DNA of 62,574 nt, counting the filler, from Platydemus manokwari (lineage: Eukaryota): NCBI GenBank assembly GCA_037951405.1. It is 6 parts of 6 records of this genome, joined end to end, with 100 filler letters (N's around TTAATTAATTAA, not from the genome) between each part and the next. Parts side by side here need not be neighbours in the genome. Positions count along the whole stretch, not along the records: positions 1 to 10,400 come from JBBMOY011136772.1; 5 more parts are not named here. One strand, written 5' to 3'. Under the pieces are notes generated by a model. That model was not told the origin of the DNA. It saw only the letters and a list, made by a program, of their open reading frames with translations, and did no database searches. Positions within the stretch are counted from its first letter, which is position 1; every line of letters starts with the position of its first letter. This document shows positions 4,830 through 10,400 of this stretch, one piece after another. Both the position numbers and the translations under genes were made by a program.

Positions 4830-6710
4830 GGTGGAACATGTCCTCGCATCATTTTTATATTATATACACAGTTTTTCTCTTTGTCCGATAATTTCTTCAA
4901 AAGGCTCATCAAATATGATTCCTCTCATTTTAAAAAATATAGATATGCTCTCTGTTTCAATTAGTTGGTGTAGTTTGAGTTCTAATACTGTTCAGTTATA
5001 TGGGGATTTAACTTTCTCAGATCTCTGCTTAACGTTTTGCATTATTTCTGATGATCATGTCAAGCCGTAGTCTTGTCACTGTTTCAGGTGGACTTGTATC
5101 AATGTCGGTGTCCAGTTCGAGTAATTGGAGGTAATGCTCGAGATCATCTAAGATAGTTGCGTGCCGTTTAGATGTCAGACCAGGGATCTCTGAACAATGA
5201 ATAAATATGTGGGCATAGGTTTCTTATTCCGTGTTGCATCTTCGGCAAAGTATGAATTTATTGATCTTCAAGAAATGTGATGTGAAGTTTAGCAGATTAT
5301 TCCAGAATCCCAGTGATAAGTGGAAGTTTTCCAGAGGCTTCTGTCATAGATGGGATTCTGAAAATCAGTGTACCAGTCTGCCTTGTCAGGTGAATTTCCA
5401 CATGAGATGAATTTCCACAATATGGTGATGAAATTCCATGCCAATTCGGTTTCTCCACATTTTTCTAACCACGAAGCACGTTTTGGTTCTTTGAGATTTT
5501 TTCCTCGGATAATTTGTCGGAAATCCCGAGTAGAGATGTTGATAGATCGTTGGTTTCAGGTAGCCTGCTTTTGACAATGTCGAGAAGATGTTGAATCATA
5601 AACCTTAGGAATTCCTGGTCTGGACTTGTCGGAAACTAGAAGGCACAGACAATGCTCTGAATGCAATAATCAATTAGGAATGTTGTGAGGTCGATTCCAC
5701 CCATTTTGTTAGAAAAATAAAGAAACTTACTGTTGCTTGAATATGAACAATCCATTTTCAGTATTTTGCGGCCTATCTGATTGATTTTCTTGTCAAATGA
5801 TTGGACCGGTTCTTTGTTGTAATTTATATTAATGTCCTTGAGTCTAGCGTTGTTGTTTCTACTTGTAGGATCCAGAAATGAAATGGTAATCTCGAGTGAA
5901 GAAAGATATCAAGGGATTGGAACTTGTGTGAAGAATGCAGTCTGTATTCGGCAATCGCTTCGAAGACCGGTAATGATAGATTGGAGTATATGATCGGCTA
6001 GTGTTCTTTTTGGTAGGCTAAAAGGGACTTCAAGATATTTGTAAACGTTTTCGCTGTCCCCAATTAGCATTGATTCATCACAGATCGACATGTCAATCCT
6101 GTTTCGAATGTTTTTGCAATAATATTCGCATTTGAAGGTGTTCATAACAATTTGGATATCTGTTGCTTGATGAATTAGATGGTTGAGCTAATTTTCGAAA
6201 TTTTCGCCGGAATTTGCAAGGGTAACGATGCTAACTGCATAAGCTAAGGTGAAGAATTGGCTGTTATGGAGGGTGAAACGCTCCGGTACGTTTGCTGATG
6301 ATCTGATTAAAAAGTCAATGAATAGACAAAAGAGTGTCATAAACAAGGGGCCTCCTTGCTTGATAACCCGGTATTTTGGAATAAGTGGAGTTTTCAGTCG
6401 GCCGCAGGAATAGGTCAATTTTGATTCTTGATACAGTGCCTGGATCATCTCGATGTAATTGATATTACATTCCATTTTGTCCAGGGTGTGCCAGATGATC
6501 CAGTGTGATAGATTTGGGAAGGCTTCTCTGAGGTTAATCCAGCAGAGATGGAGATCCTTGTTGAGTTGGGCCACGTATTCTTGCAGAGAAGATAGGTATG
6601 CATTGTGTTCTGCACAACTATCTGAGGCGAACATAGCTTTTTGACTTGGAAAGAGCAAGTTTCCGGAGTATAAATTTTAGAGTCAGAAAGGAGGGTTATT
6701 TTTGATACCA
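4830..6710 (-). mobile_element. Decayed RLE-type (NeSL/Utopia/R2-like) non-LTR retrotransposon, 5'-truncated
   Basis: RT motifs in ORF 6188-6658: QKAM..CAEH, WINLREAF, IKQGGPLF..LF, LAYAVS (degenerate YADD). Downstream are a CCHC knuckle CRRCNTE*ETYAHIFIHC (~5247-5194), an RH motif and endonuclease-like RLDMII...EVKSPY (~5070-4997). Multiple stops and frameshifts. Confidence 0.85.
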
Positions 6711-7056
6711 CAGAGCTAGAAGAGTTAAAGAATTTATATTTATACCTTTAATTTATTAATTAATCCTTTAGAATTAGTTTTTACAAAAAACTAAACAACC
6801 TCCTAACAGATATTTTAAGTGATCAACCAAATAGTAGTAAGAAATTATGCATTAATAATAAAAATATTGATAAAACTGTACTGTATAATATTTTGTATAA
6901 AAGGCAAATTATAAAATTTGATATATTAAGAATTTGACTTTAACTATCAGTTAATGAAACAATAATTTTATTCAAACAACAGCTCTTTAATTATATTATC
7001 TATTATTAAAAATTAAAATTATTGATCATCGCATAGAAACAAGCTATTAATATCAC

Positions 7057-8549
7057 ATGAGAGAAATTGTCTATGTCCAAATTGGTCAGTGCGGCAATCA
7101 AATGGGAACAAAAGTAATATTGTCAGTCATTATAAAATAAAAATTCAAGATTTGTTTATTTTAAGTTTTGGGAGATTATGTCAGACGAACATGGTCTTGA
7201 TCCTAGAGGACTCTATCGAGGTGAATCAGATTTACAATTAGAGAGAATAAATGTATACTACACGGAAGCAACAGGTGCAAGCATTATTATTTAAATAACT
7301 ATAATGATTCTAGGTGGAAAATATGTTCCAAGAGCAATATTAGTCGACTTAGAACCTAGTACAATGGAAACATTGCGAGGTAGCCCATACGGACAGATAT
7401 TTCGACCAGATAATTTTGTATGGGGGCAGAGAGGATCTTCAAATAATTGGGCGAAAGGTCATTATACTGAAGGTGCAGAACTTTTAGAATCTGTAATGGA
7501 TTTATTGAGAAAAGAAGCAGAAGGCTGTGATTGCTTGCAAGGATTTCAAGTAGCCCATTCTATTGGTGGAGGTTGTGGAGGAGGTATGGGTACATTACTG
7601 CTTCAAAGAATTAAAGATGAATATCCAGATAGGATTAATATTACATTTTCCGTTTATCCTTCGCCAAAGGTTTATAGAATAATTTATTATTATGAAAATG
7701 ACCTCAAATTTTAAATTTTTAATGATTAGGTTTCTGATGTCGTAGTTGAACCGTACAATGCTGTTTTGTCTATTCATTTAATGCTGGATTTTTCGGATGA
7801 AACTGTCGTTATAGACAACGAAGCTTTATTTGATATATGCCAAAATACTCTGAAAATAGCTCCAACATATGGTGATTTGAATCACTTAATATCAGCTACA
7901 ATGGGCGGTGTAACTACATGCTTTCGTTTTCCCGGTCAATTAAATGCTGATCTTAGAAAATTAGCCGTTAATATGGTTCCTTTCCCACGTTTACATTTTT
8001 TTATGCCTGGTTTTGTACCACTGACATCAAGAGGTAATCAGCCTTATAAAAATATTAGTGTTCCCACACTCGTTCAGCAAATGTATGACGCTAAAAATAT
8101 GATGGCTGCTTGCGATCCTAGAAATGGAAAATATTTGACTTGTTCTGGGATTTTTAGAGGAAGAATGAGTATGAGAGTGAGTTTTTTCTTTATAAACATG
8201 CTATTGATTATTGAGATTCTTTAAGGAAGTTGAAGAACAACAGTGGAATATCCAAAATAAAAATTCACGTTATTTCGTTGAATGGATACCAAATAATATT
8301 AAGACTGCAGTTTGTGACATTCCACCTAGAGGTATGAAAATGGCTGCAACATTTTTGGGAAATACTACTGCTTTACAATGGGTATTTAAAAGGATAGGGG
8401 AACAATTTTCAGCTATGTATAGAAGACGAGCTTTTTTACATTGGTATACGGGAGAAGGAATGGATGAATCAGAATTTCCTGAGGCCGAGTCGAATATGAA
8501 TGATCTTATAAGTGAATATCAACAATATCAGGATGCAACTGTCGATTAA
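7057..8549 (+). CDS. TUBB: Divergent beta-tubulin, 430 aa; exons 7057-7113, 7166-7274, 7314-7669, 7730-8176, 8226-8549
   Basis: MREIV start, [54 protein letters not shown]. Four GT-AG introns (52, 39, 60, 49 nt) give one continuous frame. Confidence 0.97.
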
Positions 8550-8604
8550 ATAAGAAGATTGGAATTGTCATTAAACATCATTAATTTTATTGTATTTTTC
8601 CACC

Positions 8605-8610
8605 AATAAA
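8605..8610 (+). terminator. Probable polyadenylation signal (AATAAA) of the beta-tubulin gene
   Basis: AATAAA lies 56 nt after the stop codon. Chance occurrence is possible in AT-rich DNA. Confidence 0.45.
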
Positions 8611-10400
8611 TTGTTCCCTCCAAACTAATGTGGTTATTATTATATCTCAGTATAGGAATTATTATTTATTCGTTTCATAGTGTTTCCGATTAATGAGGAA
8701 TTAGACTATTTAGTAAAGAAATAATCATTGTAACCGTGAAACGTTAATATATTTAAGTAAATGTTGGTTTCACAAACCAAGAATCTAGATCTTAAATCTA
8801 TAATGTGAAAATAACGAAGTCAAATCAGAAAACTTTTTTGTGCTGGGAAGTGAATATATGGTATGAATAAACCTTATAACCTTTTTAATAATCTTTAAAA
8901 CTATTTAACCATGCAATCCTAGAAATTTGTAAAAAAATATACAAGTTAACGTAGCTTATGAGTTGTATATTTAAGTTAGTCTTTCAATTATGTAACCTGA
9001 AACAATTAACTCAATCACACTCAACTTGCATGCGTAAAATAATGAGCCATAAAAAATAAAATAATAAAACTATTTCATGATAACTATAATGATTTAAACG
9101 AGCTCCATGGTGGGCCTAGGTTTATATAGAATCGAACAAACGAAGAGAATCTCAAACCATGAACAATGATGACCCAAAATGTTATAAACAAAACAATTAA
9201 TTATTTTTACAATATAAACTTGCTGTGAATTTCACCTTTGAAATTAATTTTGCTATTATGTTGGATTTTCTGAACAGACTTTGTGCACATATTATACATA
9301 ATAAAATGTATTACCTTCAGATTGAAAAACAAAAGAGATCTGGAAGAAAATAAATTAAAATTAAAATTAAATAATGTCAAAATATAGAATTAACATTTAA
9401 AATTAATAGACCTAGGTAATTAAAAATTCGACAATCTTTACCTGTAGGCTACCAATATTTGAACGACGTCAAAATTATATAAACTATTTATATTACCATT
9501 GATAATTTAAAAATTGTGATCATATCAGCCAAGGTGAAAAATAATAAATTATTCAGATTGAGAAAACCAATGACAGATAAATAAATAAAGCAACAAGAGT
9601 CGGCATATATGAAAATAAAATAAATAGTGGATAAATTCAGTTATTTGGGACTCAAATAAATTACGACAAGACGTTCTTCTTTAAAAACATTTAATTGATG
9701 TTAAGAAACGCTTATCGTTAAAAGCTAAAATATTGCGGAGAGATTTGAATCTGCAAATCTTATACAGAATTATTAGAGAATTGTGAAGTGTACTGAGCAC
9801 ATTTAAGAGCGGAAATGTTGCTTAAAATGTTATCAGAAAAATTGCAGTGATTATCGACGGTGTTCAATATGCAAGTTTATATATTATCTTAAAATCTATA
9901 ATAAATAATTCTAAGTTTTTACAGGTCAATTTTCTCTAGTTGGTTCGCAACCCTTTAATTGGCAATAAATTTGTCAATTGATTTCTCCGATTTTATAGTA
10001 AAGTTGAATAAAACATGCTGTAACTGATATTGATTTGATTTATGCTTTAATTTAATTTTATCCATTTCTTAATTTGATATCCATTCCTTAAGTGCTAAAC
10101 GCTTTAATTATTTTTGTTTAGCGAAATAATTATTTTGTGTTTGTGCATCCTCTCTTTTAATTTGTAAACCGGAAGATGGAGGTTATATAGAGCGATACAG
10201 GGTTGAGCAATGCTAATTAAAAATTAAATAATAAACCGATGAGCAAAATCACAATAGCAATAATAGTGAAAAATAGGAAACAAATCAAACCAATAAGATG
10301 ACAACAATATTATATTGGGTCTTTAACTTAATAACCGGAATTTGACACCAGATGTAAACACTTGTGTGTGTGCTGTAGCAAATCATTAACATACACGTCA

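What the first reader, a model, noticed from the sequence alone, without database searches (positions are those of the whole stretch)
8500..8610. Beta-tubulin with no acidic C-terminal tail
Seen: the spliced ORF ends [13 protein letters not shown] at 430 aa, followed by a short 3'UTR and AATAAA. No Glu-rich tail is present in frame. Established: the beta E-hook carries polyglutamylation and glycylation, binds MAPs, motors and severing enzymes, and holds the EGEF-type motif of axonemal isotypes. Inference: an intact, intron-containing, naturally tail-less isotype could build microtubules outside the tail-based tubulin code. If this is a flatworm, sperm cortical singlets or 9+'1' axonemes are candidates. 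GAT TAA A TAA GAA GAT across the stop may be a vestige of the eroded GAA-rich tail.
Basis: partly seen in the sequence, partly recalled or inferred. Interest (0 to 1): 0.75.

Follow-up and report, generated by a model that had tools for sequence, protein, structure and literature searches.

The report
Conserved beta-tubulin lacking its acidic tail
This is a real, intact, five-exon beta-tubulin gene whose protein stops where the acidic C-terminal tail should begin; close relatives stop at or within two residues of that point and one is a spliced mRNA, so the loss is kept by selection and is not an error.

Summary
A five-exon GT-AG gene (7057-8549, +) encodes a 430-aa beta-tubulin ending [13 protein letters not shown]. 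The end aligns with residue 431 of solved 445-aa beta-tubulins. No acidic open stretch lies in the 1.85 kb downstream.

A DNA run reproduces the stretch letter for letter. No RNA run of this organism was available.

A profile search found a close relative, P0290 (96% identical). It sits on an intron-less 1375-nt Logan contig, so it is a spliced mRNA. It ends DATVE-TGA at the same codon. A third relative, P0377, ends DAP. Window versus mRNA gives dN/dS of 0.02-0.04 with dS about 0.8-1.3.

The three form a clade on a long stem with very short tips. They also share altered phosphate loops: T4 is GGGCGGG instead of GGGTG[SA]G, and T3 is RGSS. Marine relatives with GGGCGGG keep acidic tails, so the tail loss is secondary.

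Tissue, organism and polymer behaviour are untested. The flatworm-sperm idea and the "vestige" are unsupported. This is a new variant of a known kind, of moderately high interest.

The parts
7020..7056 (+). 5' UTR or proximal leader
   Evidence: Aligns at about 79% with L001:36-71, directly upstream of the shared ATG.
7057..7113 (+). Exon 1, codons 1-19 ([19 protein letters not shown]), phase 0; followed by a 52-nt intron (7114-7165)
   Evidence: GT..AG borders. The junction matches L001 128|129.
7166..7274 (+). Exon 2 (109 nt), ends in phase 1; followed by a 39-nt intron (7275-7313)
7314..7669 (+). Exon 3, Tubulin GTPase domain; followed by a 60-nt intron (7670-7729)
   Evidence: Pfam PF00091, E = 1.2e-32; gene model.
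7430..7441 (+). T3 loop codons R95-G-S-S98 (canonical [ST]-G-A-G)
   Evidence: RGSS occurs only in this clade among 157 instances. It is conserved in the window, P0290 and P0377.
7565..7585 (+). T4 signature loop G140-G-G-C-G-G-G146 (canonical GGGTG[SA]G)
   Evidence: 146 of 148 retrieved beta-tubulins have GGGTG[SA]G. GGGCGGG is shared with P0290, P0377 and the marine P0380 cluster.
7730..8176 (+). Exon 4 (149 codons), end of the GTPase domain, M-loop, start of Tubulin_C; followed by a 49-nt intron (8177-8225)
   Evidence: Pfam PF00091 and PF03953; gene model.
8226..8549 (+). Exon 5 (107 codons plus stop): rest of Tubulin_C and helices H11-H12, ending DATVD
   Evidence: Aligns to residues 325-431 of PDB beta chains, E = 2.4e-58.
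8547..8549 (+). Stop codon TAA at the position of canonical residue 432
   Evidence: The relative has TGA at the same codon.
8605..8610 (+). Candidate poly(A) signal AATAAA, 55 nt after the stop
   Evidence: Present, but expected by chance about 0.4 times per 100 nt here; not verified.

Best explanation
The gene encodes a lineage-restricted, divergent beta-tubulin isotype that has lost the entire disordered acidic C-terminal tail and is kept that way by purifying selection. Shown here: (1) the gene is intact; (2) in a close relative it is transcribed and spliced exactly as modelled; (3) the protein ends at, or within two residues of, the same codon in all three known members; (4) amino-acid change between the two members with DNA in hand is about 2-4% of the silent rate. 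After a burst of change on the stem of the clade (about 61 private substitutions, mostly conservative) the protein froze. The burst includes the two phosphate-binding loops of the exchangeable nucleotide site (T3 SGAG to RGSS, T4 GGGTGSG to GGGCGGG) and a cluster in the M-loop. Helix H12 and the other interface motifs are retained. Inferred, not shown: it folds as a normal beta subunit, pairs with an alpha-tubulin and enters microtubules. There it would contribute a surface with less than half the usual negative charge. It would offer no beta-tail sites for polyglutamylation or glycylation and no beta E-hook for severing enzymes, kinesins, dynein or kinetochore couplers. From work on engineered tail-less beta-tubulin, such polymer should assemble faster and disassemble more slowly. 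The likely role is to build a specialised, stable microtubule set that tail-reading machinery does not act on. The cell type is unknown.
For: - Gene model and stop.
- Alignment to solved beta-tubulin residues 1-431.
- Pfam Tubulin plus Tubulin_C.
- The DNA contig is identical over 6700-10339.
- The relative P0290 is 430 aa on an intron-less 1375-nt Logan contig that starts with a Nextera adapter remnant. Its ORF at 72-1364 ends DATVE-TGA.
- That contig is colinear with the window across all four exon junctions and past the stop.
- 191 of 1290 nt differ, 163 of them at third codon positions, but only 17 residues differ, all conservatively. dN/dS is 0.018 (NG86) or 0.036 (LWL85).
- The third member, P0377, is 97% identical and ends DAP.
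- A neutral simulation to the observed divergence from canonical beta-tubulin gives 8.5 stops on average, and 0 of 300 runs had none. Observed changes at near-invariant columns are 82% BLOSUM >= 0, against 48% under neutrality.
- The clade has 100/100 support, a stem of 0.29-0.41 and tips of 0.003-0.03.
- T3 and T4 variants.
- Net charge of the body is -11, against a canonical mean of -15.3 before the tail is counted.
- Tail-less beta-tubulin polymerises faster and depolymerises more slowly (PMC6022761). Yeast tub2-430 deletion is viable with spindle defects (PMC4884069).
Against: - No RNA data exist for the window's own organism. Expression is shown only for a relative whose silent sites are near saturation; it could be another species or a paralogue.
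- The mRNA contig stops 11 nt after its stop codon, so alternative 3' isoforms are not excluded.
- The T-to-C change in the otherwise invariant signature motif, together with the T3 changes, could impair nucleotide handling. The protein may therefore not behave as an ordinary polymerising subunit.
- The P0377 ending (DAP) comes from a gene model with a wrong N-terminus and cannot be checked at DNA level.
- No partner alpha-tubulin, tissue or protein evidence is available.
Confidence: 0.8

Rival explanations
1. It is a conserved tubulin that no longer works as an ordinary lattice subunit. With remodelled T3/T4 phosphate loops and no tail, it could cap ends, seed or template particular structures, or sequester alpha-tubulin or a tubulin cofactor, rather than build long polymers.
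For: The T in GGGTG[SA]G is present in 146 of 148 retrieved beta-tubulins, yet it is C here, with S145G and T3 RGSS. There are 61 private substitutions on a long stem, including M-loop and H10 clusters. Strong constraint since then shows it has a function but does not say which.
Against: The Gly-rich loop binds phosphate mainly through backbone amides, and position 145 is already A or S in normal tubulins. GGGCGSG and GGGCGGG isotypes with normal tails exist in rotifers, an acanthocephalan and marine plankton, so the Cys variant is compatible with a long-lived tubulin. T1, T5, T7/H8 and H12 motifs are retained.
Confidence: 0.12
2. The tail exists but is encoded elsewhere. A minor isoform would splice from a donor inside exon 5 (for example GTCGAT at 8541) to an acidic exon beyond the window, or the stop is read through.
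For: The window ends 1.85 kb after the stop. The related mRNA contig ends 11 nt after its stop. No RNA is available from this organism.
Against: The related transcript does not use that donor and carries its own in-frame stop at the same codon. No acidic open stretch lies in any frame to 10400. Read-through would add about 20 mostly hydrophobic residues. In every beta-tubulin examined here the tail continues directly from the H12 residues in the protein or ORF; exon structure was not examined.
Confidence: 0.04
3. It is a decaying duplicate, or an assembly or sequencing error created the stop.
For: The protein is only 76% identical to canonical beta-tubulin and lacks two hallmark features. The supporting DNA run may be the source of the assembly.
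Against: The 430 codons are open and all 8 splice sites are intact. Neutral drift to this divergence gives 8.5 stops on average, and 0 of 300 simulations had none. dN/dS is 0.02-0.04 against a relative with the same end but a different stop codon.
Confidence: 0.02
4. One reading: a flatworm sperm isotype for cortical singlets or 9+'1' axonemes. This is a sub-case of the best explanation, not exclusive of it.
For: The DNA is AT-rich with 39-60 nt introns, carries a reverse-transcriptase fragment, and has a very high-copy repeat in a run with 543 Mb of contigs. All of this is compatible with a repeat-rich invertebrate genome. Fast-evolving divergent tubulins are often male-germline genes (general knowledge; PMC2880298).
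Against: Nothing identifies the organism. Rare residues are shared with marine-plankton, rotifer and acanthocephalan isotypes, not with the four flatworm sequences sampled. In Drosophila the beta2 C-terminus is needed for axoneme assembly (my recollection of Fackenthal et al. 1993 and Nielsen et al. 2001, the latter cited in PMC3382179). That makes a tail-less sole axonemal beta subunit unlikely.
Confidence: 0.15

Closest known systems
Canonical metazoan beta-tubulin (e.g. TUBB2B/TUBB4B, beta chains of PDB 1JFF, 4I4T, 7RRO)
   Same: It aligns end to end with residues 1-431 at about 75% identity and has the same two Pfam domains. The T1, T5, T7/H8 and H12 motifs are retained. The introns after codon 19 and in codon 56 are, as I recall, shared with vertebrate beta-tubulin genes.
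   Different: Residues 432-445 are absent. T4 is GGGCGGG and T3 is RGSS. 76 of 374 near-invariant positions are changed, and there is a one-residue deletion near position 218. The body charge is -11 against about -15.
Engineered tail-less beta-tubulin: yeast tub2-430 deletion and subtilisin-cleaved tubulin
   Same: The cut is at practically the same residue (430/431). It removes the acidic patch and all beta-tail modification sites (PMC4884069, PMC6022761).
   Different: Those are laboratory constructs of the sole or bulk beta-tubulin and carry a fitness cost: fivefold chromosome loss and 20% slower growth. This one is a natural extra isotype under purifying selection, with many co-occurring changes in the body.
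Natural alpha-tubulin isotypes with short, modification-poor tails: C. elegans TBA-7, human TUBAL3
   Same: These are genome-encoded isotypes that lack the usual glutamylation sites and are proposed to tune microtubule stability (PMC5638583).
   Different: They are alpha-tubulins and keep a short tail. Here the beta tail is absent altogether.
Tetrahymena beta-like tubulins BLT1 and BLT4
   Same: They are divergent beta-tubulins without the EEEE polymodification motif or the EGEF axoneme motif, and are used for non-axonemal arrays (PMC3382179).
   Different: The BLTs are longer than canonical (458-471 aa) with non-acidic extensions, and they are ciliate-specific. No orthology is indicated: they are not among the best hits of P0290.
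GGGCGGG beta-tubulins of marine metatranscriptomes (P0380 cluster) and GGGCGSG isotypes of Rotaria and Pomphorhynchus
   Same: They share Cys143, and the marine group shares 12 further rare states, including ...YLTCSG......LLLQRI..., GFVPLTS and MDESEF. The marine group is sister to the clade in the tree with SH-aLRT 90.
   Different: All of them keep acidic tails of 13-25 residues. Identity to the window protein is only about 74%. The grouping joins two long branches, so it is not secure.

Membership tests
Beta-tubulin (tubulin/FtsZ superfamily) | Tubulin GTPase domain followed by the Tubulin C-terminal domain | tested here: met
   PF00091 (E = 1.2e-32) and PF03953 (E = 3.7e-18 and 1.7e-13) on the exon translations. 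P0290 carries both.
Beta-tubulin (tubulin/FtsZ superfamily) | Full-length collinear similarity to solved beta chains rather than alpha or gamma | tested here: met
   P0290 residues 1-430 align to residues 1-431 of beta chains (E about 1e-238), and all 60 best PDB matches are beta-tubulin. Exon 5 of the window aligns to residues 325-431.
Beta-tubulin (tubulin/FtsZ superfamily) | Tubulin signature motif [SAG]-G-G-T-G-[SA]-G in loop T4 (PROSITE pattern as I recall it) | tested here: not met
   The window has GGGCGGG at 7565-7585. 146 of 148 retrieved beta-tubulins have GGGTG[SA]G. The variant is conserved in the clade and in P0380.
Beta-tubulin (tubulin/FtsZ superfamily) | Acidic, Glu-rich disordered C-terminal tail after helix H12 | tested here: not met
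   The ORF stops at canonical residue 432. No acidic stretch lies downstream. The same or a nearly identical end is seen in P0290 and P0377.
Beta-tubulin (tubulin/FtsZ superfamily) | GTP binding, dimerisation with alpha-tubulin and polymerisation | not testable with these tools
   Only inferred from retained motifs and strong purifying selection.
Processed pseudogene or decaying duplicate | Loss of introns, disabled ORF, or neutral substitution pattern | tested here: not met
   Four GT-AG introns and an open 430-codon frame. dN/dS is 0.02-0.04. Neutral simulations never stay open.
Axonemal beta-tubulin isotype | EGEF-type axoneme motif in the tail; S/T-G-G/A at residues 55-57 | tested here: inconclusive
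   T55-G-G57 is present, but the tail that would carry EGEF is absent. The motif definitions are from PMC3382179.
Tetrahymena BLT-type beta-like tubulins | Orthology with BLT1-6 | not tested
   No BLT sequence was fetched, and none appears among the 120 best hits of P0290. Only the functional analogy is claimed.

The most novel reading that the evidence does not exclude
An animal lineage keeps a dedicated beta-tubulin with no C-terminal tail at all and a rewired exchangeable-site nucleotide pocket (Cys in place of the near-invariant signature Thr). It would make a class of microtubules that glutamylases, glycylases, severing enzymes and tail-dependent motors cannot act on through the beta-tail, and that has altered GTP-dependent dynamics. 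It would be the derived end of a wider, undescribed GGGCG[GS]G beta-tubulin subfamily present in marine plankton, rotifers and acanthocephalans.
Probability: 0.35. Interest if true: 0.8.

Novelty: new variant of a known kind. Interest (0 to 1): 0.64.

Why it matters
The beta-tubulin tail is the main carrier of the 'tubulin code'. It carries polyglutamylation and glycylation sites and the E-hook read by spastin and katanin, kinesins, dynein, and Ndc80/Dam1. Its role has been studied almost entirely by cutting it off artificially.

A natural isotype that ends at the same residue as the yeast tub2-430 deletion, and that selection has held there over a silent-site divergence near saturation, is a ready-made in vivo experiment. 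Three questions become directly testable:
- which cells want tail-less lattice;
- which alpha partner it uses;
- what compensating changes the body needs.

The accompanying change of the signature Thr to Cys is shared with tail-bearing relatives in several phyla. It also marks a beta-tubulin subfamily that I did not find described in the papers searched.

Tried and rejected
- **RNA evidence from the organism.** Two run searches found only one DNA run. Laying it confirmed the letters but says nothing about expression.
- **Word search with exon 5 alone.** The length window only admits fragments. The best real hits were canonical at 82-85% identity, and P0001 is an internally duplicated model.
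- **Representative search with exon 5.** The 50% clusters are represented mostly by chimeric or truncated models, and no close relative appeared. Its use was to supply full-length scaffolds.
- **Whole-protein query.** The spliced protein has no reference, so I did not type it in. Instead I aligned the five exon translations, each in 8 staggered copies to outweigh the scaffold, to P0143:1-431. I first checked this weighting in local simulations. That profile found P0290.
- **Other sources.** The metagenome scan with P0290 found nothing above 75% identity. Looking up P0377's contig found nothing, and a paper search for the run accession also found nothing.
- **Apparent tail-less ORF L072.** Rejected: it is a ciliate gene in which TAA and TAG stand at Glu positions.
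- **Ciliate code for the window itself.** Rejected. All 22 Gln codons are CAA or CAG and there is no in-frame TAA or TAG. The relative stops with TGA, and read-through would be hydrophobic.
- **Organism identification.** The first tree's grouping with rotifers and an acanthocephalan changed once the marine GGGCGGG sequences were added. I treat the deep placement as unsure and did not identify the organism.
- **Steps of no use here.** The bacterial promoter/terminator scan, Rfam and the repeat search gave nothing relevant.
- **Literature.** Searches found no report of a natural tail-less metazoan beta-tubulin, but the library is incomplete.

Full report
**Observation.** The window's + strand carries a beta-tubulin gene. 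The exons are 7057-7113, 7166-7274, 7314-7669, 7730-8176 and 8226-8549. Every intron (52, 39, 60 and 49 nt; 15-24% G+C) begins GT and ends AG. The joined frame is 1293 nt, or 430 codons plus TAA. The last codons read [11 protein letters not shown] stop, with the stop at 8547-8549.

Pfam finds the Tubulin GTPase and Tubulin_C domains on the exon translations. Exon 5 aligns without gaps to residues 325-431 of solved beta-tubulin chains whose full length is 445. The protein therefore ends where the ordered body ends and the disordered acidic tail would begin.

Downstream to 10400, no + frame holds a stop-free stretch with at least 5 of 12, or even 4 of 8, acidic residues. AATAAA lies at 8605-8610, but the hexamer occurs about four times per kb in this AT-rich DNA, so it is weak evidence.

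The only public run that holds the stretch is genomic DNA. One contig covers 6700-10339, introns and spacer included, with no differing letter. It may be the source of the assembly. No RNA run was available.

**Is it a live gene?** The protein is about 76% identical to canonical beta-tubulins, which are normally more than 90% alike. Of 374 near-invariant columns, 76 are changed, but 82% of these changes score at least 0 in BLOSUM62 (mean +0.82).

I simulated neutral, AT-biased mutation to the same protein divergence. It gave a mean of 8.5 stop codons, and none of 300 runs stayed open. Mean BLOSUM was -0.53 and 48% of changes scored at least 0. Most of the divergence therefore accumulated under selection for a folded tubulin.

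**Relatives.** A spliced protein has no reference in these tools, and I did not type it in. Searches with exon 5 alone reached only fragments or odd cluster representatives, none closer than canonical tubulins.

I then aligned the five exon translations to a full-length scaffold (P0143:1-431). Each translation was entered in eight staggered copies so that their weight would outrun the scaffold's. Local simulations had shown this lets relatives up to about 10% diverged outrank canonical sequences.

The profile search returned P0290: 430 aa, from Logan contig SRR21676451_22370. That contig (L001) is 1375 nt and begins with a Nextera adapter remnant. It holds an uninterrupted ORF at 72-1364 that ends ...DATVE TGA. 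An uninterrupted ORF on a contig of that size means all four introns are absent, so it is a spliced mRNA.

L001 is colinear with the window from the 5' leader (7020) through every predicted exon junction and on past the stop. Its 90% cluster holds one more member, P0377 (UniParc UPI0006084E36). That gene model has a wrong N-terminus, a frame-shifted reading of exon 1. It is 97% identical to the window protein over 410 residues and ends ...YQQYQDAP.

Searching again with P0290 shows a wide gap. Its self score is 1012 bits, and the next single-domain hit scores 796 bits at 75% identity. A metagenome scan found nothing closer than 75%. The clade is narrow or thinly sampled.

**Selection.** The window CDS and the L001 CDS align codon for codon. 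191 of 1290 nucleotides differ: 25, 3 and 163 at codon positions 1, 2 and 3. Only 17 residues differ, all conservatively. dN is 0.023 and dS 1.31 (ratio 0.018) by NG86; the ratio is 0.036 by LWL85.

The stop sits at the same codon but differs (TAA versus TGA), and the last residue is D versus E. Whether L001 comes from another species or from an old paralogue, both copies have been held under strong constraint with the tail-less end intact.

In trees the three sequences form a 100/100 clade. Its stem is 0.29-0.41 changes per site and its tips are 0.003-0.03, against a median tip of about 0.02-0.04 for ordinary beta-tubulins. This is a burst of change followed by stasis.

**What else is unusual.**
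- Loop T4, the tubulin signature, reads GGGCGGG (7565-7585) instead of GGGTG[SA]G.
- Loop T3 reads RGSS (7430-7441) instead of [ST]GAG.
- Among retrieved beta-tubulins, 146 of 148 have the canonical T4 and 153 of 157 the canonical T3.
- Both loops hold the phosphates of the exchangeable nucleotide (established structural knowledge; not tested here).
- Further private changes cluster in the M-loop (residues 277-289), H5/H6 (191-217) and H10 (326-338). The region names are from my memory of the 1JFF structure.
- H12 and the T1, T5 and T7/H8 motifs are kept.
- The body's formal charge is -11, against a mean of -15.3 (range -18 to -12) for canonical bodies. Their tails each contain roughly 8-12 further acidic residues, read off the tail sequences.

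**Wider kin.** Cys143 is not unique to this clade. GGGCGSG occurs in a Rotaria isotype and in Pomphorhynchus. GGGCGGG occurs in a 12-member cluster from marine metatranscriptomes (P0380; JGI 3300019148 and an ERR1711962 record). All of these have acidic tails, for example ...DVSVEEGMENYEDEEEYD.

The marine group shares 12 further rare states with the tail-less clade, including contiguous ones: YLTCSG for YLTVAA, LLLQRI, GFVPLTS and MDESEF. It is sister to the clade with SH-aLRT 90. Both are long branches, however, and overall identity is only 74%.

Either way, every outgroup has a tail, so the loss is derived. The Thr-to-Cys change probably came first.

**Rarity of tail-less ends.**
- After EYQQYQ the window protein has 5 residues.
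- Retrieved proteins of at least 400 aa have 11 or more (mostly 15-40 or more). The exceptions are P0290, P0377 and two evidently truncated models, P0349 and P0187.
- All 34 named reference sequences carry acidic tails.
- In 67 environmental ORFs the range is 11-109. The one apparent exception (L072, DATAE stop) is a ciliate gene in which TAA and TAG stand at Glu positions throughout, so its tail is really EEGEFEEEEA.
- That prompted a check of the window's own genetic code. All 22 Gln codons are CAA or CAG, there is no in-frame TAA or TAG, the relative stops with TGA, and read-through would add hydrophobic residues. The standard code applies.

**Mechanism.** Shown: a real, spliced, selectively maintained beta-tubulin without a tail.

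Inferred: it dimerises and polymerises, giving lattice that lacks beta-tail modification sites and the beta E-hook. The best experimental proxy is engineered truncation at the same residue. Yeast tub2-430 deletion is viable but shows fivefold chromosome loss and slower growth (PMC4884069). Tubulin without the beta tail polymerises faster, depolymerises more slowly and no longer responds to magnesium (PMC6022761).

A dedicated isotype could confine those properties to one cell type or array. Natural precedents exist only for alpha-tubulins with short tails (TBA-7, TUBAL3; PMC5638583) and for ciliate beta-like tubulins that lack the EEEE motif but are longer (PMC3382179).

The main rival is that the altered nucleotide pocket makes it something other than a bulk lattice subunit. 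I cannot separate the two readings here.

The organism is hidden. The DNA is AT-rich (20-28% G+C outside genes). It carries a reverse-transcriptase fragment at 6188-6658 (-) and abuts a repeat of enormous summed depth at 10313-10397. Nothing ties it to flatworms or to sperm. The 'vestige' is two out-of-frame acidic codons, and the relative's 11 nt of 3' flank is too short to test it.

**Verdict.** The functional and taxonomic speculation is untested. This is a new variant of a known kind. I found no report of a natural tail-less metazoan beta-tubulin in the searchable literature, which is an incomplete library.

Noticed in passing
window:5000-6700, ORF 6188-6658 (-): A G+C-richer block (38-40% against 20-28% around it) holds a 156-aa ORF with a weak reverse-transcriptase match (RVT_1, E = 6.8e-06, below the gathering score). 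Neighbouring ORFs have no Pfam match. It is probably a degraded retroelement just upstream of the tubulin gene.
   Followed up: partly
window:10313-10397: In the DNA run the summed contig depth jumps from about 13 to over 500,000 here. Many short contigs and loose ends start at 10308-10313. This looks like the edge of a very high-copy repeat.
   Followed up: no
window:8436-8559: Contig depth in this one bin is 80 against 13.4 elsewhere in the gene. Other contigs at least 90% alike therefore lie on the end of exon 5, possibly further tubulin copies in the same genome.
   Followed up: no
L072:3-1330: An environmental beta-tubulin transcript in which 12 TAA and 1 TAG codons stand at conserved Glu positions (MR*IV, FW*VISD*HG, DEM*FTEA and in the tail), with TGA as the stop. 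As I recall, this is the peritrich-type ciliate code.
   Followed up: yes
P0380 cluster (L082:362-1696) and P0388/P0389/P0403, P0351: Beta-tubulins with Cys in place of the signature Thr (GGGCGGG in marine metatranscriptomes; GGGCGSG in Rotaria and Pomphorhynchus). All have acidic tails. This may be an undescribed isotype subfamily spanning several phyla.
   Followed up: partly
P0377 (UniParc UPI0006084E36): A database gene model of a close relative has a 135-residue false N-terminus that includes a frame-shifted reading of exon 1. It ends DAP instead of DATVD/E. Its DNA could not be retrieved, so the true end is unknown.
   Followed up: partly
P0001, P0121, P0143, P0171 and other cluster representatives: Many beta-tubulin representatives in the clustered libraries are internally duplicated or fused gene models. 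One example is the MC1R-TUBB3-type fusion P0171. Such models top the hit lists through double domain scores.
   Followed up: no
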